This document shows, in pieces, positions 16,203-60,022 of a DNA stretch of 64,000 nt. Position numbers and translations under genes: made by a program. The stretch is from positions 1-64,000 of the IMG/VR virus record IMGVR_UViG_3300041411_000129; one strand, given 5' to 3'. The notes below the pieces were generated by a model that had not been told where the DNA came from, did not search any database, and saw nothing but the letters and a program-made list of their open reading frames with translations. Position 1 is the stretch's first letter; each line of letters begins with the position of its first letter.

Positions 16203-16249
16203 CATAGAGAGCGTGGCGCAAGCCACGCTCTCATTACTTCTTTTTTTTT
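16203..16249. terminator. Bidirectional terminator
   Basis: GAGAGCGTGGC-GCAA-GCCACGCTCTC then T9, between convergent genes. Confidence 0.9.
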
Positions 16250-16262
16250 GTCGTGAAATCGA

Positions 16263-17807
16263 TCAATCGTCGAAGTCGCGCCAATCAGAACCACCTTCGC
16301 CATTGGTAGTACGCGCACCTACTTTCTTATACGAAAGATCTTCGTCAAGAAGCAGATCGTACTTGAAGCCCATCATTGGGTAATCTAAGAACTTCAATGC
16401 GTAATACTTATCCTGTTCCTGAGTTGCACCGATCTTACGATGCTTACCCCATTGGAACTCAGCCCATGCTTGACCTTGGTGAATAGTCTTCGCGGTAAAG
16501 ACCTCATAGTCAAACTCGGTGTTGAGCTTCTTGGAACCCTCGTAGTAGCCTTTATCCACCAGACGCTTGATGTAGTCGTCAGGATAGGTACGGGCCAAGT
16601 CACGAGTCGCTGGAGACAGTTGGTGAGCTGTGTACGCAAAGATGTTGTTTGGTGACGTGAACTTACGGACGCGACGGTGCGCTCCTTGAATCTCGTCACC
16701 AGCAACAGCCGCCACGATGTTGTTCTTGGTCAGCAGGTTGATGTAGTCGCAACCAGCCGAAACAATCTCGTAGCCTTCTTTGATGAATTGCTTCAAGTCG
16801 TCGATGTAGTCGTCGACGTCTGCACCACGAGTGTAGTCCAGAATCATGACGTGCCAGCCATTGGCTGTCATCTTGTCGAAAACGTACTGAGCGATCTCAC
16901 GAGAGTCGACGCCCTTAGTTACAACAGGTAGACCAAACTCGTATTGCATCAACAGCGTGTATAGCTTCTGAAGAACCAGCTCGGGTTTATCTTCCGCAGT
17001 AGCAAACACATGCAGCGGTTTCTTCGTCTCATCGAACAGCACGGGACTGTTGAAGATACAGAATGCAAACAGCTGATCCAGCAGAGTACCGGACTTGTTC
17101 ATACCCGGCAATGCGGATACGTTAGCCCATTCACCACGACGTGCGCCTTCCTGATCACCAGTCATCCGGTTAGCGGCCTTGAAGCCGTATTTGAGGATAG
17201 CTCGTGGATCAATGGCAAGCTGAGCCATCGCGTAGACTTCCGACAGGCTTTCAACATCACTGATGTCAATGCGGCGCATCGCACCACCAGCTTGACGCTT
17301 ACCAGACAATGGAAGCTCTGTCATCTTGGCGATGATCTCTTCACGGAAGCGTGCAACGTCACCGACCTTCTCACGATCAAAGCCGAGCTTACGTGCAGCG
17401 TCACGCAGGAGTTTCGTGAACTCCTCTACCCCGATAAAGTCGTACAGCTCGGCTGTTGCTTCATCGAGTTTATCCTTGGCTGCATCAGGATCGTCCACCA
17501 GAAGAATGGTGCGGGTAAATAGATCATATAGGCGATCATTATCCCCTGCGGCGATTCGGATGCGACCCATTAGGTCGTTAATGTCGTACGGATGCTCTGA
17601 TCCTTTCTTCTTCATCCAGATGACTAAGTTCCGAACTCGGGACAAAGCGTTGTGTTCCCGGTTGGAGTTTGAAGCATCATCAGTTAGATGAAGGTGATCG
17701 AGTGTACGATCGATTACATTGAGCAAAGCCTCAGGGTCATTCTTGCCCGAATGACTCGAGTAGTACATGGCACTGATGGCCTTGGCTAACAGTAGCTTAA
17801 TTTCCAT
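16263..17807 (-). CDS. dnaB: DnaB-like replicative helicase (phiKZ gp118-like)
   Basis: Walker A variant ALPGMNKS, DYINLL, TAHQLS, GKHR motifs; divergent from capsid operon. Confidence 0.9.
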   Translation of the reverse strand: MEIKLLLAKAISAMYYSSHSGKNDPEALLNVIDRTLDHLHLTDDASNSNREHNALSRVRNLVIWMKKKGSEHPYDINDLMGRIRIAAGDNDRLYDLFTRTILLVDDPDAAKDKLDEATAELYDFIGVEEFTKLLRDAARKLGFDREKVGDVARFREEIIAKMTELPLSGKRQAGGAMRRIDISDVESLSEVYAMAQLAIDPRAILKYGFKAANRMTGDQEGARRGEWANVSALPGMNKSGTLLDQLFAFCIFNSPVLFDETKKPLHVFATAEDKPELVLQKLYTLLMQYEFGLPVVTKGVDSREIAQYVFDKMTANGWHVMILDYTRGADVDDYIDDLKQFIKEGYEIVSAGCDYINLLTKNNIVAAVAGDEIQGAHRRVRKFTSPNNIFAYTAHQLSPATRDLARTYPDDYIKRLVDKGYYEGSKKLNTEFDYEVFTAKTIHQGQAWAEFQWGKHRKIGATQEQDKYYALKFLDYPMMGFKYDLLLDEDLSYKKVGARTTNGEGGSDWRDFDD

Positions 17808-17845
17808 ACCGCCTCACCGCAGGCAAATTGAATTGGGGATATCTC

Positions 17846-18373
17846 ATGAGTAAGCCAGTCAGTATTCGCTACATCCCAAAATGGTTGAGCGGTGCTATGA
17901 CGCACTACGGGACTGACATCAAAGAATTCGAAAGCATAGTATCGAGACACGATGTGGATCTTTACAAACTGGCGAACCATCTGTTCCGAGCTCGTCTGAA
18001 CAGTATGGGTCTGGATGAGTTCGTTTTCCCAGATGCCGATGCTGGTAAAGGCTTCAGCTCTGACGATGCTGTGTTCGCACTGTTCGGTGGTAATCCACAA
18101 CAGTTGGCGATCCCGCAATTCGTCCTGGGTTACTTCGACATCTATCCTGACAAGTACGATGGTATCATCATCGTCGAGCGGGAAGGTGGTGAAGTAAAGG
18201 ATGTTATGAAAGAACTGCTGAAAGCTGTCGCCCTTTATCGGGGCGTCGATGTGGCTTACGCGTCCGTTGTCTTCAGAAGATATCTGGAGAAAGTAAATAA
18301 AGACCTTGACCCAGGCAGCAGTCATGCGGTCGAACTTACTCGTGAGTTGACGAACAACGACCAACACGAGTGA
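17846..18373 (+). CDS. Conserved hypothetical/virion protein (phiKZ gp119 position)
   Basis: Between dnaB and capsid gene; ATG 17846 with SD GGGGA. Confidence 0.7.
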   Translation: MSKPVSIRYIPKWLSGAMTHYGTDIKEFESIVSRHDVDLYKLANHLFRARLNSMGLDEFVFPDADAGKGFSSDDAVFALFGGNPQQLAIPQFVLGYFDIYPDKYDGIIIVEREGGEVKDVMKELLKAVALYRGVDVAYASVVFRRYLEKVNKDLDPGSSHAVELTRELTNNDQHE

Positions 18374-18552
18374 TAAGTGATACATGTTATGCAAATCACT
18401 GCTATTACGGTGATATGTATAAACACACGGTTTCCATAACGCCTGCGGGACGTAGGATCGCTGTCTCTAGTCGACTAGTGACAGGTCGGCGTCGATCCTA
18501 AAATAGAAGCTTCTATCCTTCGGCAACACCAAATTGCAATTTGGAGCAATTC

Positions 18553-20739
18553 ATGAGCAAGATCGTAATTGACAAAAAATCCGGTATGCCGGATCTGGAA
18601 CACGTTTCCGCAGTGAAGATCAAAGATCACCTGCTGAACGGCACCGGCTACAGCACCGAAGCTAGCGACCTGTTGGCCGCTCTGCAAAACGGTAGCTTCG
18701 AAGCCCGCGGCACTCTGTCCCAAATCGCCGGTGAACTGGCTCCAGTGCTGCAAACCAGCATCGAGAACCAGAAAGCCGAATACGCCAACCCTGCCGGTCT
18801 GGCCGCTGCATCGTTCCTGAAAGCATTCGGTAGCAAGCCTTCCGACCTGCTGCGCCTGCAAACCTCGATGGAAGGCAAGTCGCTGACCGACGGCACCCGT
18901 TACGCTCACGCTGACGGCTCCGAATACGACAGCGTCTACTCCACCGAATCGTACGACAACCAGTCGCTGATCGACCACCTGTCGATTTCGATCGGTCTGA
19001 ACTACAAGATCGCTCGCCAGGGTCCGGCGATGGAAATGATCTACCGCACTGTGCCTCTGTCCCCAGAGCAAGGCGGTATCGACATCCAGATCCCGAACCT
19101 GTACGTCGAAAACACCCTGCAACACGCCCTGGACGGTTCCGAGTCGGACTTCGGCCTGCGCCGTGTAATGGACTCCGCGATCGACTTCACCGTTCTGAAC
19201 GACAACAGCACTCAGCTGATCCCTGGCTATAACGCCACTTCCGCTGCGAACTTCGTCGCCACTTCGGTTATCACCCCGTTCGAATACGTCAACGGTCGCC
19301 GTACCGTTACCACCTCCGGCCTGGCCGTTGGTAAGACCATCAACCTGCTCGGCATCGGCCAGATCGATTCCGTACAGCGCGTTGGTCAGGCTGACTACAC
19401 TGAAGCCCTGGACCGCAACATCGGTATCGAATCCGTGTTCCTGAGCCTCGGCGCAGACACCATTCGTTTCGACACCAAGGGTCTGCCTTACAGTCGCTTC
19501 GTGAAGACTCCAGAGCAAGGCGGTCGCGCCATGGCGCTGAACTTCCCGCTGACCACCCTGGAAATCAACAAAGACACCTTGACCTACAACGATGCCGCTC
19601 CTGCTGGCGCCGTGTTCGGTACTATCGCCAGTGGCGATTACAAGGTTCGTCTGAAGACCATCATCAACGGTCAAGCTGACGTTGAGCGCGGCACTGTGAA
19701 CATCAACGCCGGTTCGCTGGAAGTGATGTACATCAAGAACGCCGCTGGCGACAAGATCGACCTGGCTGCTGGCGTCGGCAAGACCATCGTTGATGGCCTA
19801 GCTGCACTGGCTACTTCCGCCTGGTGGCCTGATGCTCGCCTGACCAACACCAACCACCGTCACCTGGGCCTGATGCTCAACGTACGTAACGTGACCGAAC
19901 GTCTGCTGACCCGTCAGCGCGCGCCGTTCTTCGTACCGTACCCACTGAGCGAAAACCGCGACCAGACCGTAATGGACTGGCTGACCTTCGCCGTTGGTTC
20001 CTACATCAACAACGAAGCGGTGGGCACCCTGATCGGTTACCACGAGCGCCTGATGCGTCTGACTGGCGGCCTGCGTGGCGAGCTGACCGGTGGTGACTTC
20101 GAAATCAACGCACTGCCTATCGAAGGTATTGGCCGCTGGTTGGTCAACCCTTACGTTCAGGAACTGGACGTTGACTTGATGGAAACCGCTCAGTCGCAGG
20201 AAACTGTGGCAAACGTGGAAAACGGTATCGAAGTGCTGGTCAACACCCTGCGCTCCGTGTCGTTCGACATCCTGCAACGCACCAACTACGAAAACGCCTG
20301 CCGTTACATGGACGGTGGCGAGATCACTTCGAAGTGGCGCATTGCCCTGGTTACCAGCAAGAAGATCGAGCGCTTCATGACGATCCAAGGCGACAGCCGC
20401 ACCCTGGGTGCCGGCCTGAGCTACCAGCTGGAAGCCGATGTCGACCAGCGTCTGTCGGACGTGATGTACCTCACCATCGTTCGCGATGGCGAAGGCGTGG
20501 ACGCTCTGTCCGCCGGTGCAATGCTGTTGACTCCGACCCTCGTGTCGACCATCAGCGTTACCCGTAACAACCGTCCTGGTAACGAAGCTGTTGTACAGCC
20601 TCGCTTCCAGCACTACAACTTCCTGCCGATCATCGTCAAGCTGAACATCAAAGGCGTCGACGAGCTGCTGGAAAGCACCCTGCCTTTTCGTATCAAAGGC
20701 GACATTAATACCACTGATGTTAGCAGCCCCGCTCCGTAA
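18553..20739 (+). CDS. Major capsid protein precursor (phiKZ gp120-like)
   Basis: About 728 aa, extreme codon bias, N-terminal S-x-E protease motifs (STE, SFE, SIE, SME), C-terminal VQPRFQHY..LPII; start at ATG after GGAG. Confidence 0.92.
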   Translation: MSKIVIDKKSGMPDLEHVSAVKIKDHLLNGTGYSTEASDLLAALQNGSFEARGTLSQIAGELAPVLQTSIENQKAEYANPAGLAAASFLKAFGSKPSDLLRLQTSMEGKSLTDGTRYAHADGSEYDSVYSTESYDNQSLIDHLSISIGLNYKIARQGPAMEMIYRTVPLSPEQGGIDIQIPNLYVENTLQHALDGSESDFGLRRVMDSAIDFTVLNDNSTQLIPGYNATSAANFVATSVITPFEYVNGRRTVTTSGLAVGKTINLLGIGQIDSVQRVGQADYTEALDRNIGIESVFLSLGADTIRFDTKGLPYSRFVKTPEQGGRAMALNFPLTTLEINKDTLTYNDAAPAGAVFGTIASGDYKVRLKTIINGQADVERGTVNINAGSLEVMYIKNAAGDKIDLAAGVGKTIVDGLAALATSAWWPDARLTNTNHRHLGLMLNVRNVTERLLTRQRAPFFVPYPLSENRDQTVMDWLTFAVGSYINNEAVGTLIGYHERLMRLTGGLRGELTGGDFEINALPIEGIGRWLVNPYVQELDVDLMETAQSQETVANVENGIEVLVNTLRSVSFDILQRTNYENACRYMDGGEITSKWRIALVTSKKIERFMTIQGDSRTLGAGLSYQLEADVDQRLSDVMYLTIVRDGEGVDALSAGAMLLTPTLVSTISVTRNNRPGNEAVVQPRFQHYNFLPIIVKLNIKGVDELLESTLPFRIKGDINTTDVSSPAP

Positions 20740-20802: not shown

Positions 20803-20834
20803 CATAAAGCCGGGACTTCGGTCCCGGCTTTATG
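20803..20834. terminator. Terminator-like hairpin after capsid gene
   Basis: CATAAAGCCGGGAC-TTCG-GTCCCGGCTTTATG. Confidence 0.85.
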
Positions 20835-20862
20835 CCGTCTACGGCAATTCACGTATAAAGAA

Positions 20863-20880
20863 ATTACAGACATACATTAC
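20863..20880 (+). promoter_or_regulatory. Putative early promoter for the operon containing the nvRNAP subunit
   Basis: ATTACAGACATACATTAC. Confidence 0.75.
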
Positions 20881-20951
20881 TAAAATAGGCGTAGTAGGAA
20901 AAGAGTAAAACCATTGGGGACCGTAGTTATATACACAGGGGCAATAAGGTT

Positions 20952-22067
20952 ATGGATAGTTCGGGACGTCGTTTTGTTCCGTTCGATAAGTTCACCTCTC
21001 GTGCAGAGTTGAGCGATCCCGATTTGAAGGGTCGTGAGAACGCAGCGTTTACAATGCGCTACGTTAATGCGTCAAGTCGGACTATAAGCGTCAAAACCAG
21101 AATGGGCGTGCATTCGATTCTCAAACCGAAGCAGTACACTCAGGGCGGTGAGTACATTGACGTCTTTCTCGAATGGACTATGACTAAGGAATCTTACAAA
21201 TCGACCTATGTTGATTTCTTAGACCGGCATCGAAATCCGCAAGGGTTAGCAGCAGAAATCATCAATGCCTTTGAAGCGAGATTGAATTCTTGGTCTCATC
21301 AGGGCCGGTTGACTACTCTCACGATTCATGTGGAGATTCAACTGAATGATGTTGTTAATGCCGGGGGTACTGTGTACTTGGAAGAGTTGGATCTATTGAT
21401 CTCGCTCGAACCAGAAGTTGAGAAGTTTGAGGAGCATCCGTTCAGTAACTTTAATCGGTTGCAGTATGGATTAGCCGCTGACCTACCTCACTTGGGTAAA
21501 GATACTCTGCTGTTCTCGATCAAAGCCGTAGACAATAGTTCTCTTAGAAATAGACATGATCGGTTTATGCTGTTAGGCAACACCGTTCACCATATTCCAA
21601 TTGAACGCGATTTAAGGTTACGTGACGGTGTACATGTCACAACTCGGCGACCAGCCGCAGTGAAGAACGTCATTGGGTCTGGTGCAACCATCCACACTGA
21701 ACATCTGTCGTTTGAAGATGCAGATGCTCGGTTCAACTTAGCTGACAGTATTGAGAAAGCCCAAGCTGGTGTTAGTTGGCAAGAAATGCGTAAAGAAGAA
21801 ATAGCCCGCAGAGCGCACGAACAGAAAATGAAAGAGTTCGATCGAGCTGGGGAGAAAGCTGACACAGACCACACGTATACGCGAGAGAAGACAGAGTCCG
21901 AAAGGGCATTCGCTCGCGAGCGTGAGGAATGGCTTCGCTGGAAACATCGCGAAGACGATGTTAAAGAGAAGACTAAAAACTTGGGCGACTGGATTCGTTT
22001 GGTCGGTGGGATAATCACATCGTCGCTAACTGTGTTAACGATGGTGGCTAAAATGAAACCTTCATAG
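20952..22067 (+). CDS. Conserved hypothetical protein (phiKZ gp122-like), C-terminal coiled coil and hydrophobic tip
   Basis: 371 aa; position before the RNAP subunit. Confidence 0.75.
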   Translation: MDSSGRRFVPFDKFTSRAELSDPDLKGRENAAFTMRYVNASSRTISVKTRMGVHSILKPKQYTQGGEYIDVFLEWTMTKESYKSTYVDFLDRHRNPQGLAAEIINAFEARLNSWSHQGRLTTLTIHVEIQLNDVVNAGGTVYLEELDLLISLEPEVEKFEEHPFSNFNRLQYGLAADLPHLGKDTLLFSIKAVDNSSLRNRHDRFMLLGNTVHHIPIERDLRLRDGVHVTTRRPAAVKNVIGSGATIHTEHLSFEDADARFNLADSIEKAQAGVSWQEMRKEEIARRAHEQKMKEFDRAGEKADTDHTYTREKTESERAFAREREEWLRWKHREDDVKEKTKNLGDWIRLVGGIITSSLTVLTMVAKMKPS

Positions 22068-22083
22068 ATGGGTAGGGGATGGA

Positions 22084-23736
22084 ATGCATACTTGGTTATT
22101 TGACGACTTGCAGAAGAGGATGCCTGTTTTCAATCAGGACATTCTGGATGGACTCGCCTATCGTGGCTTGGACGATGCTAAGGGACTCGTAGATCAGACT
22201 ATTGCGTGTGCTGAAAACAGTTATCCAGATGACTTCGAGTACAACGGATCTTACATCTGTAGTCCTCAGGAAGCGTACAGCGTTATGTCATCTTCGCTGA
22301 CACGGTCCGATCGTTCCACCCCCTCCATCGACTTAGCGCAAAGCGATGTCTACATGGTGAAGTATCAGTTCTCCTGTAATGGCGTTCAGCTATATCCGCG
22401 CTATTTCTGCTTGCCTGCTCCAAGGCGCGGTGGGTTGCTCACCATTACAGGTAAACAGTTCGCCATCGGCGATGTACTAACAGACCCTGGCCTATCGATA
22501 GGCCAGGACTTTGTGTTCATCCGTATGTCACGCGCTCCGGTTACATTCAAGCGCCTGATCTACACCGTTTTGAAAGATGGAGAAGATTACTCCGAGTACA
22601 TTGCTTATTCTTGGCTGCACCACCGGTCCGCCAACAATAACAAGAAGTCGGAAAGTGATACCATCACGCTTGGTAAGGTGATGTCTACTCTGCCGCATTA
22701 TCTCTTCTGCCGTTATGGCTTGAAAGAGACGTTCGCTCGGTTTGCGTATTGCGATGTTGCAATCGTTACCGAAGAGTTCTTGGCCGAGAACCCCGTTGAC
22801 CCTGAAAAGTATACCGTAGTCAGATCAGCCAAGTCCCGGCCGGCTGCATTGAAGCTGCGTGTGCATTACCCCGATATCGCTACAAACCTCTGCCTGATCA
22901 TTCCTAAAGCTGCTACCAATCAGCTGACCATGGCGTTTGCCTTGGCGTTCTTCTATCTGGTCGATCTGTTCCCTCAGGATCTGCTGGTTGAAGACTTGCT
23001 CGGCGATGACATCTGGAAGCGCTGGATGGGTTACGTTCTCTTTGGCGACCAGATGTCTGTTGGTAAGCTGGTTGAGAACGTGGTGAGTCACCTCATCAGC
23101 CTGGATGATTACGTGGACATCGAAGTACGCAAGACTCTGCTGGATGAAGAGAACTTGGATGTTGAAAACCTCTACGAGTTCTTTGCTTACATTCTCGTTC
23201 AGATCGATCACCTGATTGATTCGAAAGCGGAATCCATTGGCTCCATGTATGGTAAACGCTTGGTGACTGCGCAGTATGTACTGCGTGACATCTACGAGCA
23301 GATCTTCCGGTGTCTCTTCGAGATCACGAATAACCGGAAGCGTAAGCACACAGCGGATGACTACAACAAGATCTTGGGTAAGTTCTTTATGCCCACGATC
23401 ATCTTCAACCTGCGCAAGACTAGCAGCAAACCGTTTATGTCCAGCGTGTCTACCCCTGGCGACAACATGTTCTTCCGAATCACCTCTCGCTTGGTAATGC
23501 AGGCGCAAACGAGTGCTGGGCGTAAATCCCAGAACTTGAACGTGAACGATCCACAATCGTGGCTCGACGGTTCGATTGCTGAAGGGGGTAACCACCTTAT
23601 CCTTCCGAAGCACTCCCCACTGGGTCGTAATACGATCAACCCGACAGTGGAACTGGACGAGAAGAATACGATTGTGCGGAAAGAACACATGAAGCCAATC
23701 GTTGCACATATCGACGCGGCTATCGGCCGAAACTAA
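22084..23736 (+). CDS. Non-virion RNA polymerase beta-like subunit, N-terminal part (phiKZ gp123-like)
   Basis: 550 aa; LP...G.L.I.G beta-type motif, SMYGKRL, GR..INP; synteny. Confidence 0.85.
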   Translation: MHTWLFDDLQKRMPVFNQDILDGLAYRGLDDAKGLVDQTIACAENSYPDDFEYNGSYICSPQEAYSVMSSSLTRSDRSTPSIDLAQSDVYMVKYQFSCNGVQLYPRYFCLPAPRRGGLLTITGKQFAIGDVLTDPGLSIGQDFVFIRMSRAPVTFKRLIYTVLKDGEDYSEYIAYSWLHHRSANNNKKSESDTITLGKVMSTLPHYLFCRYGLKETFARFAYCDVAIVTEEFLAENPVDPEKYTVVRSAKSRPAALKLRVHYPDIATNLCLIIPKAATNQLTMAFALAFFYLVDLFPQDLLVEDLLGDDIWKRWMGYVLFGDQMSVGKLVENVVSHLISLDDYVDIEVRKTLLDEENLDVENLYEFFAYILVQIDHLIDSKAESIGSMYGKRLVTAQYVLRDIYEQIFRCLFEITNNRKRKHTADDYNKILGKFFMPTIIFNLRKTSSKPFMSSVSTPGDNMFFRITSRLVMQAQTSAGRKSQNLNVNDPQSWLDGSIAEGGNHLILPKHSPLGRNTINPTVELDEKNTIVRKEHMKPIVAHIDAAIGRN

Positions 23737-23760
23737 TTTAACTCAAGAATAGGAAGATGT

Positions 23761-25713
23761 ATGGCAAGCGACTCTCGTGAAGCGGAACGGATCTGGGACC
23801 TCGTCTTTGACGAGACCATCCGTTACATCGAGGCGAAAGCTGATGGCGTCGATGTTCGGGATGATTTCATTCTGGATCTTCGTCGCAGTTATGCTGAAAA
23901 CCTCGGCAAGCATCGTTATAACAACAGCAACATGGACAAGCTGGTCAAACTGACCTTTGCGAATCTTCGTAACATCGAAGACGAACTGGGTCAGCGCGGC
24001 GATCGCGAGAAGGACATCATCCGTCTTGGCGTTGAAGCGATGGTGGATGGTCACTTCGCTGAATCCGTTTTCGCCGATCCAAAGCTTGTTCGTGAATTGC
24101 CGCGTGATGCTGAGCGCGGTATGGAAGATGCAATGCGTCTGGCTGCTAAGCTGGCCGGCGCTGGACGCCGTCGTGGTGGTCGTGACGATCGTGATGACGA
24201 TCGTGATGATCGCCGTGGCGGTGGTGCTCGTTGGAGTACCCGTGATGATCGTGATGATCGGGACCGTGACCGCGGTGGCCGTGATCGTGATCGACGTGAT
24301 ACTCGCCGTAGTGGTCCTCGTGACAGCCGTTCGGTTAACGATGGTGCTGATCACTGGGACGTTCTCTCTGACATCGGTGTTGCTACTGATGAACGAGATG
24401 ATCGCGATGATCGTCGGGATGAACCACGTCGCGAAGAACCACGCCGTGAGCGTGAGCCCGAACGTCGTGAACCTGAATACGAACATCCAGAAGAACCACT
24501 GCCGCATCTGGAAGCTCGCAACACTCACGTAGATGGTCCTGACCATACGCGTGCAAACCCGTACGAAGATTACTGGCTGAATGATGAGCATTGGCGTGTC
24601 GCTCACTTGTCCGGCTGGAAACTTACTGGCGATGGTGAACAACTGATCACCGCCGTCCCAACCCTTTACGACGTCAACCAATACATCAAGTATTACGTCA
24701 TGGATAGCAGCGGCGAAGTCCGCGAGGAGTTAGTTGAAGTGGATAACGAAAACAAGCAATTGGCACACAGCCTGCGTGAAGATACCCAATCGATCGATGC
24801 TCCTAAAGCAGCACCTACCGGCGGTATCTCGCTGAAGGCGTTGAAAGAAGGCGTTACCGATATCAGCCTGGAGCTGGACAAGCCTGGTCTGAAGCTGGGT
24901 GACCTGATCAAGCAGATCCCTACTGACCAGTTGACCTTCTCCAACGCTCTCGCTGCCGACAGCATTATCAGTGCCGTATTCCAAGGGCGTGTTCGCCTGA
25001 ACTCGGAAGATGCACCGGTGCGTGTTGACGTGCAATTCCTGCGTACCCCTATCGCAGTGCAAGACAATGCTCAACTGGATCTGGTTGCCAAAGTCGGCGC
25101 TGCCAATACACTGACCCAGGCTGCTGAGCTGCTGGAAGAACTGAAGCCACAATTCGAGAAGCCGGTATTCGAGCTTCTGAACAAACGCTTCACCGAAAAC
25201 CTGCTGCGCTCCGCGAAATACCAGTTCCAATTCGACAAGGTTACCAAGCTGGACTTCAGCCGCCACTACGGCCGCTTCCTGGATGCGTACGGCACCAAGC
25301 GTGGCGCTGCCGAAGCAGCACAGTTCGCTCAGCGTGTCGGTCACGTAACCACCCTGTCCACCGCTTACGTCTCCGCTGAAGAAATCGCCGACATCGCCGG
25401 TGATCTGATCACCGACGTGAAGAATCCGAAGGCTCTGGTCTTCTTGGATGTTCTGGCAGTAGCGAGCTTCGCTGCAACCATCGACGAACTGGGCATCGGC
25501 CTGGCTCTGACCATGGACGAAACCGGTCTGGCTGTTACTCAGTCTTCCAACCGTGAACTCTTCACCACCCTGCGTGGTCTGTACTCGGCCCTCGAGCAGC
25601 AAACCCCGCCGGGCCTGAAGCCTCGCCTCTTGCTGTCCACCTCTGACAACCGCCTGATTGAAGTACTGCCTTACGCTTGCCGCCTGGAATCTTTCATCCT
25701 GGCTGCTGTGTAA
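23761..25713 (+). CDS. Conserved hypothetical protein (phiKZ gp124 position) with R/D/E low-complexity region
   Basis: 650 aa, strong codon bias. Confidence 0.8.
   Translation: MASDSREAERIWDLVFDETIRYIEAKADGVDVRDDFILDLRRSYAENLGKHRYNNSNMDKLVKLTFANLRNIEDELGQRGDREKDIIRLGVEAMVDGHFAESVFADPKLVRELPRDAERGMEDAMRLAAKLAGAGRRRGGRDDRDDDRDDRRGGGARWSTRDDRDDRDRDRGGRDRDRRDTRRSGPRDSRSVNDGADHWDVLSDIGVATDERDDRDDRRDEPRREEPRREREPERREPEYEHPEEPLPHLEARNTHVDGPDHTRANPYEDYWLNDEHWRVAHLSGWKLTGDGEQLITAVPTLYDVNQYIKYYVMDSSGEVREELVEVDNENKQLAHSLREDTQSIDAPKAAPTGGISLKALKEGVTDISLELDKPGLKLGDLIKQIPTDQLTFSNALAADSIISAVFQGRVRLNSEDAPVRVDVQFLRTPIAVQDNAQLDLVAKVGAANTLTQAAELLEELKPQFEKPVFELLNKRFTENLLRSAKYQFQFDKVTKLDFSRHYGRFLDAYGTKRGAAEAAQFAQRVGHVTTLSTAYVSAEEIADIAGDLITDVKNPKALVFLDVLAVASFAATIDELGIGLALTMDETGLAVTQSSNRELFTTLRGLYSALEQQTPPGLKPRLLLSTSDNRLIEVLPYACRLESFILAAV
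24166..24500 (+). repeat. Low-complexity coding repeat (CGTGATGAT-like; RDDR, EPRR)
   Basis: RDDRDDDRDDRR, RDRDRRD, EPRREEPRREREPERRE. Confidence 0.8.
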
Positions 25714-25860
25714 GCTTTACCATCAGGTTCCTGCTACGCCAAGCACAGAGGTGGTCAGTAATGTGGCCGCACCCATCAACTTAACCGTAATACTGTAGGA
25801 CGAATCCGTGGGCCCGTAATGGGCCCTCGGTGCATTATCCGAGAGGTAGTGTTTTTTTTT
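25714..25860 (+). ncRNA. Candidate structured RNA or attenuator
   Basis: Several hairpins, complementary loops and a T9 tract. Confidence 0.35.
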
Positions 25861-25878
25861 GCCTGAAAACAACAGGGG

Positions 25879-26523
25879 ATGACGATGACTTCTATCATCG
25901 AACGCTTGGCATTTGCTAATCCTGAAGAAGAAGCTTCTTTTGAAGCCTCCGGGATGGAGTACGAAAACGAGATTTACATCTCGGGTTATGATCTTCAGCA
26001 GATCGTCACCACAGCGACGTATCACGAGGGTCAAGAGCAATGGGGGATCTTTGTACCAAAGTCTGATCAGAACGCCTCCAGCGGCTCTATACGCGTTCGT
26101 ATGACCGAACACGAAGACAGCTCAGTGGTTTATGAACAAACCACCAAGACTGACGCTAAAGAGAAGGGTAAGCTTGAGAACGAGCGTCCTTCTGATGAAG
26201 TAATGTTCGGCCAGTTTAAACTGATGGCTGATCAGGGTCTCATCAAGATGCGCTATGTCATCGAAGCTACCACCCGTGATGGCGTTCCCTTCAAGTTTGA
26301 AGTGGACATCTTCCGTAACGGTAAGGGTGAGGTAGTTCCATGGGCGAAGATCGACGCTGAACTTCCGGATGGTTATGAACTGACCCCTGAAGAGATCCCA
26401 TTCACTCACGATGAACTCATCATCCTGACCCCTGCCATGAAAGTGGACCGTCAGGCTGAAGTGAACAAGAAGGTCGCTAAGTTGTACGAGACCTACTTCC
26501 GCAGTCCTAACGTACACGTATGA
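25879..26523 (+). CDS. CYTH-like (triphosphate tunnel) protein
   Basis: E-x-E near N-terminus, IRVR, TTK, E-N-E, KMRY, FEVDIF, KIDAE. Confidence 0.75.
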   Translation: MTMTSIIERLAFANPEEEASFEASGMEYENEIYISGYDLQQIVTTATYHEGQEQWGIFVPKSDQNASSGSIRVRMTEHEDSSVVYEQTTKTDAKEKGKLENERPSDEVMFGQFKLMADQGLIKMRYVIEATTRDGVPFKFEVDIFRNGKGEVVPWAKIDAELPDGYELTPEEIPFTHDELIILTPAMKVDRQAEVNKKVAKLYETYFRSPNVHV

Positions 26524-26531
26524 GGTGCTGC

Positions 26532-26681
26532 ATGTACGCTAACAAACTAGCGCTGGCTATTCATGCTGCGTTGTTTCCTACTGAATACAGTGAACAGCAG
26601 CGGCGTGAGGACGAAGCGTGGGCTCGGCGGCTCTATCAGATCAAACATCCGAATGCGATGCCGATATACTTCGTTACTTGA
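26532..26681 (+). CDS. Small hypothetical protein, 49 aa (not in ORF track)
   Basis: MYANKLALAIHAALFPTEY...IYFVT; SD GAGGTG. Confidence 0.6.
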   Translation: MYANKLALAIHAALFPTEYSEQQRREDEAWARRLYQIKHPNAMPIYFVT

Positions 26682-26694
26682 TGGCATAAGCCGA

Positions 26695-26743
26695 CATAAA
26701 GACCGTGGGTAAACCCACGGTCTTTATGCTCTTTCTTTTTTTT
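26695..26743. terminator. Bidirectional terminator
   Basis: CATAAAGACCGTGGG-TAAA-CCCACGGTCTTTATG plus T-tract. Confidence 0.9.
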
Positions 26744-36380: not shown

Positions 36381-36389
36381 GTGATTGGG

Positions 36390-36430
36390 GTGGACAGGAT
36401 CTTAATGGTCCTGTCCACTTCGCTTTATGC
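36390..36430 (+). terminator. Hairpin after portal gene
   Basis: GTGGACAGGAT...GTCCTGTCCAC-TTCGCTTTATG. Confidence 0.7.
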
Positions 36431-36631
36431 TGCGTGTTAATTATTCACTATCACACTTGCTTTTATGTTAAAGAGCTTTCTTCCTTATTCTAGAGGAGAC
36501 GTAGTAACCTAGACTAGAAGTCTAGGGGACGAAGTCGACGATGGACTAACGTGAAGGAGTCGTAGACGACTGAACCTCTCTAGTTCTTTACTAGGGAAGG
36601 GGAGGGGGCTTTTTGCTGTATAGTCAAATTT

Positions 36632-36649
36632 ACTTGGGTGATACATTAC
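36632..36649 (+). promoter_or_regulatory. Putative early promoter
   Basis: Ends in ATACATTAC, same 3' half as 20863. Confidence 0.55.
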
Positions 36650-36684
36650 AAATCCGATAAGCAATCCCCCGAGGAAACAACATC

Positions 36685-37311
36685 ATGATCAGTGGCACGA
36701 TGAGATTCGCCGTAGGCTGCGTAGTTGCTGCTGGTGGCCTCTTGGTGACTTACAAAGCAGGTATGGACCTGTACGAGAAGCATCAGCAGAACAAAGAGAT
36801 CCGCGCCTACAAAGAGGCGCTCAGAATCCACAACAGCTATTACGAGGAAGAATACAAACTACCATTAGCAGACTACATGGAACGGCTGGCTGTACCGTTT
36901 CGGTACGTCCATCGCTTTCCGTACGTTAAATGCACAAAGCCCGAGAAGTACGAAATCCTGATGTGTCCTTTCGGGGTACTCATCAATCATGACGTAGCGC
37001 TGATGCTAGCGTGCGCTATGGCGCGTAAGCAGTTCCAGTACGACTACCCTAAGGTTCTTGGCGGGGGTCCTCTGGTGTGGTCTGTAGCGCAGACGCGTTA
37101 TGTCACGCAAGACAATCTGGAAAGCGGAATGAGAGACCTGTTCCACGCCGAGTATACGGCTGAGCAGTATCTCGAACAATGCTTGCACTTCCGCAAGCAG
37201 ATGAAAGAACACAAGGGAGAACCAATCGTTCTCTTCGTCCAGAAACAATCCAAAATCATTCGCCACTTACTCAATGATGATTCATTCGAACCCGGCGAAG
37301 ACATGCTCTAA
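36685..37311 (+). CDS. Hypothetical early protein with N-terminal hydrophobic segment
   Basis: 208 aa, SD GAGGA. Confidence 0.8.
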   Translation: MISGTMRFAVGCVVAAGGLLVTYKAGMDLYEKHQQNKEIRAYKEALRIHNSYYEEEYKLPLADYMERLAVPFRYVHRFPYVKCTKPEKYEILMCPFGVLINHDVALMLACAMARKQFQYDYPKVLGGGPLVWSVAQTRYVTQDNLESGMRDLFHAEYTAEQYLEQCLHFRKQMKEHKGEPIVLFVQKQSKIIRHLLNDDSFEPGEDML

Positions 37312-37323
37312 AGGAGAGTAGCA

Positions 37324-37698
37324 ATGCCTGAAGTTAAAGCAACACTCAGTCCAGAAGTGGAACGTTTCCACAATAACCTCGAGTTCACCCTCGAATGCAT
37401 CACCACTCCTGAAACAGTAAAGAAGATCCTCGACGATCTGGCTGCGAAGGGCTACCATCTGGAACTGTGGCAGAAGATGGCGCATCCTCCCAGGCTTCCC
37501 GGTAACTTTGACTTCAACGAAACCTACGAACCTGAGCGAGGCGCTCCGGATGCAGACGAAGGCATCTACGCTAACCTGGGTTATTACATCGCACGATACA
37601 CCGGTCTGAGCGTCCGTGCTGATCAGGTGGCATACCTGATGGGTCAGATGCGTGAAGAGCTTCAGTACGAGTTCTTCTACCGTCCAGTAACCGCCTAA
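37324..37698 (+). CDS. Hypothetical protein
   Basis: 124 aa, SD AAGGAG. Confidence 0.8.
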   Translation: MPEVKATLSPEVERFHNNLEFTLECITTPETVKKILDDLAAKGYHLELWQKMAHPPRLPGNFDFNETYEPERGAPDADEGIYANLGYYIARYTGLSVRADQVAYLMGQMREELQYEFFYRPVTA

Positions 37699-37701
37699 CG
37701 G

Positions 37702-37747
37702 CATACAGAGCGTGGGGCAACCCACGCTCTGCTTACTTCTTTTTTTT
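37702..37747. terminator. Bidirectional terminator, near copy of 16203
   Basis: CAGAGCGTGGG-GCAA-CCCACGCTCTG then T8. Confidence 0.9.
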
Positions 37748-50964: not shown

Positions 50965-50997
50965 CATAAGAGCCGGGGCTTCCCCCGGCTCTCTATG
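50965..50997. terminator. Hairpin between convergent genes
   Basis: CATA-AGAGCCGGGG-CTTC-CCCCGGCTCT-CTATG. Confidence 0.8.
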
Positions 50998-55043: not shown

Positions 55044-55047
55044 ACAG

Positions 55048-55078
55048 CATAAAGCCCGGCCTTGAGCCGGGCTTTATG
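55048..55078. terminator. Hairpin between convergent genes
   Basis: CATAAAGCCCGGC-CTTGA-GCCGGGCTTTATG. Confidence 0.85.
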
Positions 55079-55085
55079 TTTGTCA

Positions 55086-57609: not shown

Positions 57610-57611
57610 CC

Positions 57612-57992
57612 ATGTTGAACTTACGTCTAAATATGCGTCTGATGTTGCAACTTCCATTGCTTCTCTTGGGATCATGCACGCCGGTGATTCCAAGTACATC
57701 GATCGTCATTTATACGGTTGAGAGCCCTGCGCCTCAAGTGCAGCACAAGAAATCTCAGCCGGTGCAAAAGAAGCAAGCGCGTAAAGTCACCGATAATGCT
57801 GAGAAGTGCGAACGCATGGAGCTGGCTGTTATCGAGACATACAAGATCCCTGACCTACCGGATCTCACTAATCTCTCTCCAGACGACGACCCAGCCGTAG
57901 TGGACGCGCTGTATGAACACATCAAGCTGTTGCGAAGTGAGCTCAAGCGTGTGATGGCAGATTACAAATGTACGGTAAGTGGTACTCCGTGA
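57612..57992 (+). CDS. Putative outer-membrane spanin lipoprotein (Rz1-like)
   Basis: Lipobox LLLLGSC, Pro-rich segment, two further Cys; start uncertain. Confidence 0.6.
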   Translation: MLNLRLNMRLMLQLPLLLLGSCTPVIPSTSIVIYTVESPAPQVQHKKSQPVQKKQARKVTDNAEKCERMELAVIETYKIPDLPDLTNLSPDDDPAVVDALYEHIKLLRSELKRVMADYKCTVSGTP

Positions 57993-58056
57993 GTGGTTGA
58001 TTCAAAAGATACAAAACTGACCAATACTCTAGGCGTACCTCTTAAGGAATTCAAGA

Positions 58057-59544
58057 ATGGCTGATACACCAGTAGCAACTGGAGCGGTCCTTTATACGGA
58101 CGGCGGTTTCTTAGCCGATAAACGTATCGGCGGATGGGGTGTTCACGGTTACACTTTCATCGATGAAGCTCCAAAGAAAGGCACGGGTAACCCGAAAGCC
58201 GTGCCTTCTGATAAAGGCTATCTCGGTGACAACATCGTGGGCAACAAGGTCACTCCGATCGAGTACATCGATCTGATTGGTGGCCGCAGGGATTACGGGA
58301 GCAACAACGAGGTCGAACTCGAAGCAATGTATCGTGCATTGCTGTGGCTTCAAGAAAACCCTGAGATCATCAAAGCGGTATTGCTCAGCGATTCGATGTT
58401 CGTGGTGAAGGGTACTGACTTCCTACCGGCATGGGCAGAGGGCGGTAAGTGGCTCAATAAGAAGGGCGGTCCAATTAAGTACCGCCCTCTGTGGGAAAAG
58501 TACAAAGAGGTCTGGGATGACCTGAGGTCGAAGATCTCCATTGAGATGAACCACGTCAAGGCTCACAATGGGGAAATGGGCAACACCATCGCTGACTCCC
58601 ACGCCGGGAGAGGTTTGGTGTTAGGAACGAAGAAGGACGATACGATCATCCGCGATCGTAAAGTCGCTCAAGGGTATTGGGGTAATAAGAACGTCATCCC
58701 GCGTATTCTCCAAGCCCCTCGTTGGTATTTCGCAACAAACGATCTCGAGTACAAACGAGCAGACGGCACAACTGTCTACTACGTTGGTTCGCACGGCACG
58801 AAAGATAAGGAAGACGAACTGTACGGCAAACCGTACGCTGACAACTTCCTTGGCGTGGTACGGGTCAAAGAGCCCGATCCAGTAATGGAAACCTTGCGTC
58901 TCACAGCTATCGCAAAAGATGCCAAGCAGTACGGCGCTATTGTGATTGCGCACTTGGATGCAATCTTCTCTCCCAAGACGTACAAAGAGCTTTCTGACTA
59001 CAACACCACCTTCCTGTATCCGTCCAAGAAAGGCGTCGACTTGCTCGATTCCAAGGACGTTCCAGTACTGGTGGAGATGCGGCCAGCAGGCTTAGGTTTC
59101 AGGGGTGTGCAGTCTTGGGACGGCATGAGTAGGGTTCTAGATGGAGTCCTTGAAGGTGATGATTACTACGTCCTCACCGACATTACGGACTTACTCTATG
59201 AGGAGAAGGGCGATAAGAAAGTCGTCCGGAAACTCAAGCCGAGTATTTCCCAAATTGTCAAATACCTCGATGTAGGGGTGACATTCAACTTGGAGAAAGC
59301 TAAGGATGAACCCAAACCGTTCATCGGTAAAGTGCGTTTGGTCTTGGGTGGCGATATACTGACACGGAACCAGTTGGCGGCTCTGGCAGAGGACGTTAAG
59401 TCCGTTAAAGTAGTGTGCTGGAGGGAATCTGATAACGTAGGACGTTACGCTACCATGGTAGAGCTGTTGTCTGGTGATGTCGGCATTTGGGCACGGACAG
59501 CATCAAACATCTACTATCACACGATCAAGCAGAAGACTAACTGA
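58057..59544 (+). CDS. rnhA: Ribonuclease HI with long C-terminal extension (phiKZ gp155-like)
   Basis: LYTDGG, SNNEVELEA, LSDS, HVKAHNG..GN..AD. Confidence 0.92.
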   Translation: MADTPVATGAVLYTDGGFLADKRIGGWGVHGYTFIDEAPKKGTGNPKAVPSDKGYLGDNIVGNKVTPIEYIDLIGGRRDYGSNNEVELEAMYRALLWLQENPEIIKAVLLSDSMFVVKGTDFLPAWAEGGKWLNKKGGPIKYRPLWEKYKEVWDDLRSKISIEMNHVKAHNGEMGNTIADSHAGRGLVLGTKKDDTIIRDRKVAQGYWGNKNVIPRILQAPRWYFATNDLEYKRADGTTVYYVGSHGTKDKEDELYGKPYADNFLGVVRVKEPDPVMETLRLTAIAKDAKQYGAIVIAHLDAIFSPKTYKELSDYNTTFLYPSKKGVDLLDSKDVPVLVEMRPAGLGFRGVQSWDGMSRVLDGVLEGDDYYVLTDITDLLYEEKGDKKVVRKLKPSISQIVKYLDVGVTFNLEKAKDEPKPFIGKVRLVLGGDILTRNQLAALAEDVKSVKVVCWRESDNVGRYATMVELLSGDVGIWARTASNIYYHTIKQKTN

Positions 59545-59561
59545 TCGTAGAGGTCTCACTA

Positions 59562-59978
59562 ATGAACGTCGACAGACTGGCATCGGGTAATTATCCGGTA
59601 GTTGTACAACATCATCCAGTCAATGATGGTGAACTAAGTCCGAAGCACAGCATAAAACGATTTATCTTCGTTACATCGCTGTGGTGCTGGATGAATCATA
59701 TCGACAAACCCACCGCTTGTGCGATGGAGGAGTTAAATGATCGGTTCAAGTTAGTTATGAGGTCGAAAGCGTTATTGTTCCCTGCGGCCATGAGCAAGAT
59801 GGTCTGGGGTAAGATCGACCTCGCGACCATTCATACTCGCTACAGACAACGGAAGATTCGGATCGAAGATGCAGTTACCGAGCTGATGCGTTGCGCGCCC
59901 TCTTGGGTACGCTACGACAGTGACGAGTTGCTCCTTCGGGACGTTGAGGCGATCTTCCGTAGCGTCAAAACGGTGTGA
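59562..59978 (+). CDS. Hypothetical protein
   Basis: 138 aa, SD GAGGT. Confidence 0.75.
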   Translation: MNVDRLASGNYPVVVQHHPVNDGELSPKHSIKRFIFVTSLWCWMNHIDKPTACAMEELNDRFKLVMRSKALLFPAAMSKMVWGKIDLATIHTRYRQRKIRIEDAVTELMRCAPSWVRYDSDELLLRDVEAIFRSVKTV

Positions 59979-59982
59979 GCAG

Positions 59983-60022
59983 CATACACTCCCCAGCAGA
60001 CAACTGCTGGGGAGTGTATATG
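59983..60022. terminator. Hairpin between convergent genes
   Basis: CATACACTCCCCAGCAG-ACAA-CTGCTGGGGAGTGTATATG. Confidence 0.85.

What the first reader, a model, noticed from the sequence alone, without database searches (positions are those of the whole stretch)
16203..60022. Two kinds of hairpin tail (U-tract versus TATG), possibly a two-polymerase termination code
Seen: hairpins at 20803, 26695, 50965, 55048 and 59983 are framed by CATA...TATG, and most lack a long U-tract. At 16203 and 37702 the plus strand (early islands) reads stem then T8-9, while the minus strand (dnaB, endolysin) reads stem then TATGCCG. 26695 has both tails on the plus strand. The portal hairpin is followed by TTTATGC. 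The 10553 terminator is an exception (TTATTT). Known: phiKZ-like phages have separate virion and non-virion RNAPs, and TATG is the late-promoter core. Inference: hairpin+TATG may be a terminator, processing or re-initiation signal specific to the non-virion RNAP.
Basis: partly seen in the sequence, partly recalled or inferred. Interest (0 to 1): 0.6.

Follow-up and report, generated by a model that had tools for sequence, protein, structure and literature searches.

The report
Two terminator tails in a jumbo phage
The hairpins are this phiKZ-like jumbo phage's transcription terminators: the hairpin-plus-TATG form is a motif already published for phiKZ, but the extra run of eight or nine T's occurs only on the strand and units that carry early promoters, which fits (without proving) the idea that the phage's two RNA polymerases stop at different signals.

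Summary
Observation confirmed. All eight hairpins exist and fold far better than shuffles (z -5.4 to -9.3). The window is the first 64 kb of a 253,921-bp phiKZ-like phage from rhizosphere metagenomes.

Genome-wide, 52 of 104 post-gene hairpins carry TATG at the 3' stem edge, against a 2.5% background. The extended box is TATG-Y-Y-G-T, which is the terminator motif YTTATKYYGT already published for phiKZ and 201phi2-1. CATA...TATG framing marks convergent junctions, where both strands need the box. Half of the tandem sites have TATG without CATA.

The second tail is not a canonical U-tract. It is YTC-T8-9-G starting about 7 nt after the stem.

T-run tails are strictly plus-strand: 29/80 against 0/24 here, and 92/347 against 0/108 across four related genomes (p = 9e-13). 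So is a roughly 30-copy promoter motif, AAAnnTTACAGTCAYACATTAC, akin to phiKZ's early TATATTAC. It heads chimallin and three of the four nvRNAP-homologue loci; the fourth follows chimallin.

The first terminator after that motif is T-run type in 17 of 23 units (p = 0.0014). Late, structural and replication genes end in TATG-only hairpins.

The correlation with temporal class is supported by these proxies. Polymerase specificity is not shown, because no RNA data exist. SPN3US lacks the TATG class.

The parts
10546..10588 (-). Terminator hairpin (10559-10588) between tandem minus-strand genes, with the variant tail TTATTTACCGT (K=T form of the TTATKYYGT box).
   Evidence: (-26.1 kcal/mol, z -5.7)
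12374..12419 (+). Early-type promoter motif (AAAAAGATTACAGTCATATATTG...) heading ten small plus-strand ORFs, 12465-16198.
   Evidence: PWM score 37.9; map
15984..16029 (+). Weaker copy of the early-type promoter motif, upstream of the 48-aa ORF 16052-16198.
   Evidence: PWM score 16.8
16200..16249 (.). Bidirectional terminator at a convergent junction. Stem 16207-16232. Plus strand: spacer ATTACTTC then T9 (16241-16249), ending the early-type unit. Minus strand: TATGCCG (16200-16206), ending the DnaB-like helicase gene.
   Evidence: a paralogous copy at 37689-37747 is 88% identical
20803..20838 (+). Terminator after the major head protein gene (18541-20739): CATAAAGCCGGGAC-TTCG-GTCCCGGCTTTATG then CCGT. 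No T-run.
   Evidence: -28.4 kcal/mol, z -6.6
20849..20894 (+). Early-type promoter motif heading the unit 20952-26681, which contains the homologue of phiKZ nvRNAP subunit gp123 (22084-23736).
   Evidence: PWM score 30.6
25806..25860 (+). Hairpin 25806-25830 followed 22 nt later by T9 (25852-25860), inside the same early-type unit.
26693..26743 (.). Bidirectional terminator at a convergent junction carrying both tails on the plus strand: CATAAAG...CTTTATGC, spacer TCTTTC, then T8 (26736-26743). The minus strand reads stem + TATGTCGG.
   Evidence: (z -8.3 and -8.6)
36383..36432 (+). Terminator after the 952-aa virion structural (portal-like) gene: stem core 36390-36418, then TATGCTG at 36426-36432.
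36618..36663 (+). Weak early-type promoter motif (GATACATTAC) upstream of ORFs 36685-37698.
   Evidence: PWM score 14.3
37699..37747 (.). Bidirectional terminator. Stem 37706-37731. Plus strand: CTTACTTC + T8 (37740-37747). Minus strand: TATGCCG (37699-37705), ending the baseplate-hub/lysozyme-like gene 37754-38434.
50965..50997 (.). Bidirectional terminator at a convergent junction: CATA-AGAGCCGGGG-CTTC-CCCCGGCTCT-CTATG. TATG box on both strands, no T-run.
55046..55080 (.). Bidirectional terminator at a convergent junction, after the SbcC-like unit on plus and the virion-protein unit on minus: GCATAAAGCCCGGC...GCCGGGCTTTATG. Same stem as at least 9 other copies in the genome.
59982..60021 (.). 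Bidirectional terminator at a convergent junction, after the RNase H-like unit on plus: 16-bp stem with TATG box on both strands.
   Evidence: (-34.5 and -40.3 kcal/mol)

Best explanation
The hairpins are the phage's transcription terminators and they carry two separable 3' signals.

**Signal 1: the TATG box.** It reads TATG-Y-Y-G-T and begins at the 3' edge of a GC-rich stem. It is present on whichever strand an operon ends. At convergent junctions both strands need it, so the site becomes a perfect palindrome, CATA...TATG. This is the conserved phiKZ-type terminator.

**Signal 2: the pyrimidine tract.** It reads YTC-T8-9-G, starts about 7 nt after the stem, and is found only on the plus strand. 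It lies preferentially at the ends of units headed by the early-promoter motif, that is, units transcribed by the virion RNA polymerase.

**Most likely working (inferred).** The non-virion polymerase stops at hairpin + box. The box supplies a sequence-specific pause, possibly through the same beta-lobe contact with non-template TATG that the phiKZ enzyme uses at promoters, or as a G(-10)/Y(-1)/G(+1)-type pause. The virion polymerase needs the T8-9 tract, which fills the whole RNA:DNA hybrid with rU:dA. The same DNA would then be punctuated differently early and late.

**Shown:** the structures, the motifs, their strand and context distribution, and their conservation.

**Inferred:** that these are RNA 3' ends in this phage, the temporal classes, and which polymerase reads which tail.
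For: - Hairpin stability.
- TATG at the stem edge in 52/104 hairpins against a 2.5% background.
- Logos: CTT-TATG-C-Y-G-T here, CTG-TATG-C-Y-G-T in relative G001, TT-TATG-Y-Y-G-T in phiKZ. These equal the published YTTATKYYGT, found at 61 mapped phiKZ terminators and as 201phi2-1 motif A.
- The base of the stem changed (AAAG to ACAG) between this phage and G001 while TATG stayed. The conserved feature is therefore not U-richness.
- The box is strand-specific. Among tandem plus-strand sites, 14 have TATG without 5' CATA and 13 have both, whereas 15/15 convergent sites have both. At 16207 and 37706 the minus-strand TATG is unpaired.
- Hairpin-associated TATGs have Y 98% / Y 95% / G 55% downstream. 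The 126 other intergenic TATGs have flat context.
- T>=7 runs: 24 plus against 1 minus. Of 21 intergenic runs, 19 lie 0-20 nt (median about 7) after a hairpin, 8 are at convergent junctions, and only 3 are within 100 nt of a promoter motif.
- T-run tails by strand: plus 29/80 against minus 0/24 here; G001 18/68 against 0/26; phiKZ 25/100 against 0/30; DT01 20/99 against 0/28. Pooled p = 9e-13.
- Promoter motif: about 30 copies, all plus-strand; 26:1 in G001. The related TATATTAC is 23:0 in phiKZ intergenic regions.
- The motif directly precedes chimallin and the homologues of nvRNAP gp123, gp68 and gp71/73-gp74.
- The first terminator after the motif is T-run type in 17/23 units, permutation p = 0.0014.
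- Genes before T-run tails are small (median 152 aa against 304 aa, p = 9e-4) and mostly unannotated. TATG-only tails follow capsid, portal-like, terminase, DNA polymerase, helicases, baseplate and virion proteins.
- Orthologous gene ends keep the TATG class in 27 pairs.
- The phiKZ nvRNAP beta-like subunit GP123 binds non-template TATG.
Against: - No transcript data exist for this phage. Terminator function here rests on homology of the motif to mapped phiKZ sites.
- Temporal class is inferred from a promoter motif and gene content, not measured.
- Seven plus-strand ends carry both tails, and 6 of 23 motif-headed units meet a TATG-only hairpin first. The classes are not exclusive.
- In G001 the motif-to-T-run association is only p = 0.06. 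In phiKZ my crude tally is 9 U against 8 T, and some phiKZ T-runs may belong to the T-rich upstream part of early promoters.
- The box tolerates TGTG (8 of 60) and TTATT variants, which weakens a strict link to the TATG promoter pocket.
- SPN3US, also a two-polymerase jumbo phage, uses stem-adjacent U-tracts on both strands and almost no TATG. Such polymerases can therefore use ordinary terminators.
- PhuZ ends in a TATG-only hairpin here.
Confidence: 0.55

Rival explanations
1. There is one generic class of intrinsic terminator, read alike by both polymerases. The 'box' is just a short, imperfect U-tract (UUUAU) plus an ordinary elemental pause (Y-G). The T8-9 tract is a back-up or booster added to heavily transcribed early units. 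Its strand bias is a by-product of early units lying on the plus strand.
For: ARNold classed the phiKZ motif sites as intrinsic terminators. The box contains G-rich(-10)...Y-G as in the universal pause consensus (the consensus itself is from my own knowledge). TU sites carry both signals. SPN3US shows that jumbo-phage polymerases can use plain hairpin + U terminators on both strands.
Against: T-run tails are 0 of 108 on minus strands in four genomes, which is hard to explain if the tract were a general booster. In G001 the stem base is CUGUAUG, so U-richness is not what is conserved. The T-run starts about 7 nt from the stem, too far to act as the U-tract of that hairpin.
Confidence: 0.27
2. 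The TATG after the hairpin is the late-promoter core (T-3 A T G+1). The modules would be terminator-promoter cassettes that restart transcription for the next gene, and at convergent sites would fire antisense RNAs.
For: TATG is the essential phiKZ late-promoter core. In 27 tandem plus-strand sites the box lies 20-60 nt upstream of the next start codon. TATG/CATA is the second most depleted tetranucleotide (obs/exp 0.57), as expected of a functional signal.
Against: Thirty-three boxes sit at convergent junctions where no gene follows. The box has a conserved YYG(T) extension that is absent from hairpin-free intergenic TATGs and from phiKZ late promoters, which show no conservation downstream of TATG. 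phiKZ P119L has no upstream hairpin. The motif was found at mapped 3' ends, not 5' ends.
Confidence: 0.1
3. The hairpins are RNA processing or stability elements. The hairpin would protect the 3' end and UAUGYYG would be an endonuclease cleavage site, so the 3' ends are made by cutting rather than by termination.
For: Stable tetraloop hairpins (UUCG, GNRA) are typical 3' protectors. Long-read 3'-end mapping cannot by itself tell termination from processing (my own knowledge).
Against: There is no evidence for a cognate nuclease. This does not explain the strict plus-strand restriction of the T-run or its link to the early-promoter motif.
Confidence: 0.06
4. The hairpins are DNA-level repeats (REP/MITE-like palindromes or recombination sites) with no role in transcription.
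For: The same stem, CATAAAGCCCGGC, recurs in at least 10 copies here, and CATACAGCCCGGC recurs in G001. This looks like a repeat family.
Against: The sites lie almost only just after stop codons. The box follows the strand of the ending gene. Orthologous positions keep the hairpin and box with different stem sequences. The phiKZ equivalents are mapped RNA 3' ends.
Confidence: 0.02

Closest known systems
Conserved phiKZ terminator motif BCCYCCCCHWWDGGGRRGGBYTTATKYYGT (Putzeys et al. 2024, PMC10914365) and 201phi2-1 terminator motif A (PMC11512511)
   Same: A GC-rich stem-loop directly followed by TTAT-K-YY-GT. It lies after gene ends and is bidirectional at convergent genes. My own scan of phiKZ reproduces it, and the logo here is the same box.
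   Different: The stem sequence differs (GCCCGGC here, CCCTCCC in phiKZ). The papers call it an intrinsic terminator with a 'TTAT region'. As far as the text I could read shows, they do not separate a T-run class or link tails to strand, promoter class or polymerase.
Canonical bacterial intrinsic (Rho-independent) terminator
   Same: A GC-rich hairpin after a gene. An A-rich 5' flank and U-containing 3' flank give bidirectional action.
   Different: The TATG class has only UUUAU, or UGUAU in the relative. In the T-run class the run starts a median of about 7 nt after the stem instead of abutting it.
phiKZ late promoter core T(-3)ATG(+1), bound on the non-template strand by nvRNAP subunit GP123 (PMC4666361, PMC12809450)
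   Same: The same four bases. TATG is strongly avoided elsewhere in the genome.
   Different: The promoter has no conserved flanks and needs no hairpin. The terminator box has YYG(T) downstream and a hairpin upstream, and often faces no gene.
Oligo-T termination without a hairpin: eukaryotic RNA polymerase III, archaeal RNAP, and the vaccinia early T5NT signal used only by the virion-packaged polymerase (from my own knowledge, not tested here)
   Same: A run of T's on the non-template strand, associated with one transcription class. As in vaccinia, that class belongs to a virion-carried multisubunit polymerase.
   Different: Here 19 of 21 intergenic runs sit just downstream of a hairpin. The run is longer and uniform (T8-9, flanked YTC...G). 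No factor or mechanism is known.

Membership tests
phiKZ-type conserved terminator (hairpin + YTTATKYYGT) | GC-rich stem-loop placed just after the end of a gene or operon | tested here: met
   104 hairpins with dG <= -12 within the 3' region of called genes. Window examples have z -5.4 to -9.3.
phiKZ-type conserved terminator (hairpin + YTTATKYYGT) | 3' box TTAT-K-YY-GT starting at the stem edge | tested here: met
   Logo of 60 sites: T/T before TATG, then C 41/60, Y 59/60, G 34/60, Y 48/60. My phiKZ scan gives the same logo.
phiKZ-type conserved terminator (hairpin + YTTATKYYGT) | Coincides with mapped RNA 3' ends | not testable with these tools
   No RNA run holds this phage. Supplementary tables of the phiKZ and 201phi2-1 papers are not held.
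phiKZ-type conserved terminator (hairpin + YTTATKYYGT) | Host genome is a phiKZ-like phage with virion and non-virion multisubunit RNAPs | tested here: met
   Reciprocal best hits to phiKZ gp55, gp68, gp73, gp74 and gp123 (nvRNAP), gp80 (vRNAP), plus MCP, DnaB, PhuZ and terminase. Chimallin was identified by PHROG.
Canonical intrinsic terminator | U-tract of about 7-9 nt abutting the stem | tested here: not met
   The TATG class has UUUAUG or UGUAUG. T-runs begin a median of about 7 nt after the stem. SPN3US, by contrast, does show abutting U-tracts.
phiKZ late promoter (TATG, +1 = G) | Lies upstream of a co-directional gene and starts its transcript | tested here: not met
   Thirty-three hairpin-associated boxes are at convergent junctions. 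Transcription start sites could not be tested.
phiKZ late promoter (TATG, +1 = G) | No conserved sequence beyond the four bases | tested here: not met
   Hairpin-associated TATGs have Y, Y, G downstream, while other intergenic TATGs are flat.
Jumbo-phage early (vRNAP) promoter | Highly conserved AT-rich motif of about 10 nt, recurring upstream of presumed early operons on one strand (PMC7598289, PMC8244752) | tested here: met
   About 30 copies of AAAnnTTACAGTCAYACATTAC, all plus-strand and nearly all intergenic. The motif is conserved in G001 and shares ATTAC with phiKZ TATATTAC. It precedes chimallin and nvRNAP genes. Early timing itself was not tested.
Hairpin-independent oligo-T termination (Pol III / archaeal / vaccinia-early type) | The T-run alone suffices and no hairpin is needed | tested here: inconclusive
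   Nineteen of 21 intergenic T>=7 runs have a hairpin 0-20 nt upstream, one has one 22 nt upstream and one has none. Spacing argues against classical coupling, but co-occurrence is near-total.

The most novel reading that the evidence does not exclude
phiKZ-lineage jumbo phages use a two-signal termination code. The non-virion polymerase is stopped by a hairpin plus a non-template TATG-YYG box, read by the same beta-lobe pocket that recognises its promoters. The virion polymerase reads through such sites and stops only at a T8-9 tract that fills the whole hybrid. One stretch of DNA would therefore yield long early transcripts and short late ones.
Probability: 0.3. Interest if true: 0.8.

Novelty: new variant of a known kind. 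Interest (0 to 1): 0.55.

Why it matters
How the two non-canonical multisubunit RNA polymerases of nucleus-forming jumbo phages terminate is not known. In the papers I could read, the published terminator motif is treated as a single intrinsic class.

A strand- and class-restricted second tail, conserved from this soil phage to phiKZ, gives a concrete hypothesis. It can be checked against phiKZ ONT-cappable-seq data, which were sampled at ten time points although the published analysis may have pooled them, and with the purified nvRNAP. If it holds, it would explain how early and late programmes share the same DNA, and it would give class-specific terminators for engineering these phages.

If it fails, the finding reduces to another genome carrying the known phiKZ terminator motif.

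Tried and rejected
- **Megablast of 8 kb against the phage collection:** no match.
- **RNA evidence:** The look-up of sequencing runs found only DNA metagenomes from rhizosphere, root and soil.
That included a T9-to-T8 change at 16241 and a 224-bp insertion after the T-run in one strain. It is too little to test selection on the signals.
- **Rfam:** no family at gathering score in the window.
- **Supplementary tables:** those of the phiKZ and 201phi2-1 ONT-cappable-seq papers, which would have allowed a direct test of tail against promoter class, are not held. Ceyssens 2014 is not held either.
- **T-run as the T-rich upstream part of early promoters:** considered and rejected for this phage. 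Only 3 of 21 intergenic runs lie within 100 nt of a promoter motif, and 8 face the end of a minus-strand gene. It may hold for some phiKZ sites.
- **CATA...TATG as mere stem extension:** rejected because of the unpaired minus-strand boxes at 16207 and 37706 and the 14 tandem sites that lack CATA.
- **Promoter-to-terminator grammar in phiKZ:** my simple tally was inconclusive, 9 U against 8 T.
- **Early T-run count:** the 56:1 figure was an artefact of overlapping matches. The corrected figure is 24:1.
- **Not used:** the large protein searches, structure prediction and complex prediction, because the question did not need them.

Full report
**What the window is.** The window is bases 1-64,000 of a 253,921-bp virus record with direct terminal repeats. 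It has no near relative in the phage collection. Its proteins match phiKZ-like jumbo phages at about 25-38% identity.

- It encodes homologues of the phiKZ non-virion RNA polymerase subunits gp55, gp68, gp73, gp74 and gp123, and of the virion subunit gp80.
- It also encodes a chimallin, PhuZ, the major head protein and terminase.
- It shares the DnaB(-)/gp119-like(+)/MCP(+) arrangement of phiKZ.
- The same phage occurs in many rhizosphere, root and soil DNA metagenomes, but in no RNA run on record.

**Check of the observation.**
- Folded as RNA on the relevant strand, they reach -23 to -40 kcal/mol, z -5.4 to -9.3, with no shuffle out of 200 as stable.
- The tails are as described. At 16207 and 37706 the plus strand reads stem, eight bases, then T9 or T8, while the minus strand reads stem then TATGCCG. 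At 26695 TATGC is followed by T8. After the portal-like virion gene the stem is followed by TTTATGCTG. At 10559 the minus strand reads TTATTTACCGT.
- CATA and TATG are reverse complements, so where both are present they extend the stem. That is what the minimum-energy folds show.

**Genome-wide picture.** I called genes with a self-trained codon model (292 genes, 219 plus and 73 minus). I then looked for the best hairpin in the 3' region of each gene.
- Of 104 hairpins at dG <= -12, 52 have TATG and 8 TGTG within -8..+4 of the stem end. TATG occurs in 2.5% of random 19-nt windows.
- Aligned on TATG, the sites read C-T-T-TATG-C-Y-G-T.
- Intergenic TATGs next to a hairpin (75) have Y, Y, G downstream at 98%, 95% and 55%. 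The other 126 intergenic TATGs have no context at all.
- The box follows the strand on which a gene ends. All 15 plus-strand and 15 of 18 minus-strand boxes at convergent junctions are matched by CATA on the other arm. Of 27 tandem plus-strand boxes, 14 have no CATA.
- At 16207 and 37706 the minus-strand box is unpaired. It is therefore a sequence signal, not only a longer stem.

**This box is already known.** ONT-cappable-seq of phiKZ gave a conserved motif at 61 terminators, a stem-loop followed by a 'TTAT region': BCCYCCCCHWWDGGGRRGGBYTTATKYYGT. The commonest 201phi2-1 terminator motif resembles it. My own scan of the phiKZ genome gives TT-TATG-Y-Y-G-T.

A 248,574-bp relative from IMG/VR (G001; 157 reciprocal best hits, median 47% identity) gives C-T-G-TATG-C-Y-G-T. 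The bases next to the box changed (CTTTATG to CTGTATG) while TATG-YYG stayed. What is conserved is the box, not U-richness. Orthologous gene ends keep the TATG class in 27 pairs.

**The second tail is not a classical U-tract.**
- There are 24 distinct runs of T>=7 on the plus strand and one on the minus strand (correcting).
- Twenty-one are intergenic. Nineteen of these lie 0-20 nt (median about 7) downstream of a hairpin.
- They are uniform: T8-9, always preceded by C (usually YTC) and mostly followed by G.
- Eight face the end of a minus-strand gene, and only three are within 100 nt of a promoter motif. They belong to the terminator, not to a promoter.
- In sites with both tails the T-run follows the TATG box (for example CTTTATGCTCTTTC-T8).

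**Link to transcription class.**
- A promoter-like motif, AAAnnTTACAGTCAYACATTAC, occurs about 30 times, always on the plus strand and almost always intergenic. It is conserved in G001 at 26:1.
- It shares ATTAC with TATATTAC, the most enriched intergenic word of phiKZ, where it is 23:0 plus-strand in intergenic regions. Reviews describe exactly such a motif as the early, virion-polymerase promoter of these phages.
- Here it directly precedes chimallin and the homologues of gp123, gp68 and gp71/73-gp74. These are genes that must be made before the non-virion polymerase exists. The gp55 homologue follows chimallin.
- T-run tails occur at 29 of 80 plus-strand hairpins and 0 of 24 minus-strand ones (p = 1.6e-4).
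- The same holds in G001 (18/68 against 0/26), phiKZ (25/100 against 0/30) and Pseudomonas phage DT01 (20/99 against 0/28). Pooled: 92/347 against 0/108, p = 9e-13.
- The first non-trivial terminator after the motif is T-run type in 17 of 23 units here (label permutation p = 0.0014) and 9 of 16 in G001 (p = 0.06).
- Genes before T-run tails are short (median 152 aa against 304 aa, p = 9e-4) and mostly without PHROG annotation, apart from chimallin.
- TATG-only tails follow the major head protein, portal-like and other virion proteins, terminase, DNA polymerase, helicases, DnaB, baseplate proteins and RNase H-like protein.

**Interpretation.** Every minus-strand operon carries no early-promoter motif and is largely structural, so it should be read only by the non-virion enzyme. 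All of these end in hairpin + box and never in a T-run. Early-motif units end in T-runs.

A plausible mechanism for the box comes from the 2026 structure showing that the beta-like subunit GP123 binds non-template TATG under the beta-lobe. The same contact during elongation could pause the enzyme 6-9 nt past the hairpin. The Y-G that follows resembles the universal elemental pause (my own knowledge). The T8-9 tract equals the length of an RNA:DNA hybrid, so it could release a polymerase on its own, as oligo-T does for Pol III, archaeal RNAP and vaccinia early transcription (my own knowledge). These steps are inference.

**Limits and counter-evidence.**
- No RNA data exist for this phage.
- Temporal class is a proxy.
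- Seven ends carry both tails.
- Six early-motif units meet a TATG-only hairpin first.
- PhuZ ends TATG-only here.
- TGTG and TTATT variants exist.
- My phiKZ promoter-to-tail tally is inconclusive, and some phiKZ T-runs may be promoter parts.
- SPN3US has almost no TATG class and uses stem-adjacent U-tracts on both strands. The code, if real, is therefore specific to the phiKZ lineage.
- The re-initiation reading is disfavoured. Thirty-three boxes face no gene. The box context differs from promoter TATGs. P119L has no hairpin. The published motif marks 3' ends.

**Verdict.**
- Observation: confirmed.
- Interpretation: partly supported.
- The hairpin + TATG element is a new member of a published terminator family.
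- The strand- and class-restricted T8-9 tail, and the two-polymerase reading of it, were not described in the papers I could search. They are testable with existing phiKZ data and enzymes.

Noticed in passing
window 12440-12467, 12812-12838, 13146-13172; genome 88728, 103648, 192881, 233238, 234074, 240593, 244121 (start codons): A conserved translation-start motif, AACGACCG(A/T)GGAGGTC, lies a few bases before the ATG/GTG of many small early-type genes. GACC and GGTC could pair around the Shine-Dalgarno GAGGAGG.
   Followed up: no
whole genome G000: TATG/CATA is the second most under-represented tetranucleotide (obs/exp 0.57 under a Markov-2 model; CTAG is 0.52). Inside genes, TATG is 383 on the sense strand against 162 on the antisense strand. 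Intergenic density is about 4 times the coding density.
   Followed up: partly
window 55046-55080 and genome 102241, 144097, 172531, 199835, 236977, 246877, 249823, 250849: One stem sequence (CATAAAGCCCGGC...GCCGGGCTTTATG) recurs about ten times. The relative G001 has its own recurrent version (CATACAGCCCGGC), and phiKZ uses GCCCTCCC. This suggests homogenisation of terminators within each genome.
   Followed up: partly
genome 109684, 127004, 192527 and other tandem plus-strand sites: Eight of 34 tandem plus-strand hairpins without a plus-strand box still carry (G)GCATA on the 5' side. This is a minus-strand TATGCC box where no minus-strand gene ends, and may be a stop for antisense transcription.
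   Followed up: no
window 16248-16262: One environmental strain (run X4) has 224 extra bases between the T-run and the DnaB stop codon. Another (X7) has T8 instead of T9 at 16241.
   Followed up: no
window 16189-16249 and 37689-37747: The two plus-strand T-run terminators in the window are paralogous copies, 88% identical, including the last codons and stop of the preceding ORFs (GCCTAA(A)CGGCATA).
   Followed up: no
window 23761-25713: A 650-aa ORF lies next to the gp123-like RNAP subunit, in an early-type unit. It has no PHROG match. The recognisable chimallin homologue lies elsewhere, at 122214-124262.
   Followed up: no
Salmonella phage SPN3US (NC_027402), loci L063-L074: This two-polymerase jumbo phage has almost no hairpin + TATG terminators (4 of 81). 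It uses stem-adjacent U-tracts on both strands (7 of 19 on the minus strand), so the TATG box is lineage-specific.
   Followed up: partly
genome about 197996-199893: A 1.1-kb gene-free stretch contains tRNA-like sequences (seen in upstream strings). It was not scanned with the tRNA tool.
   Followed up: no
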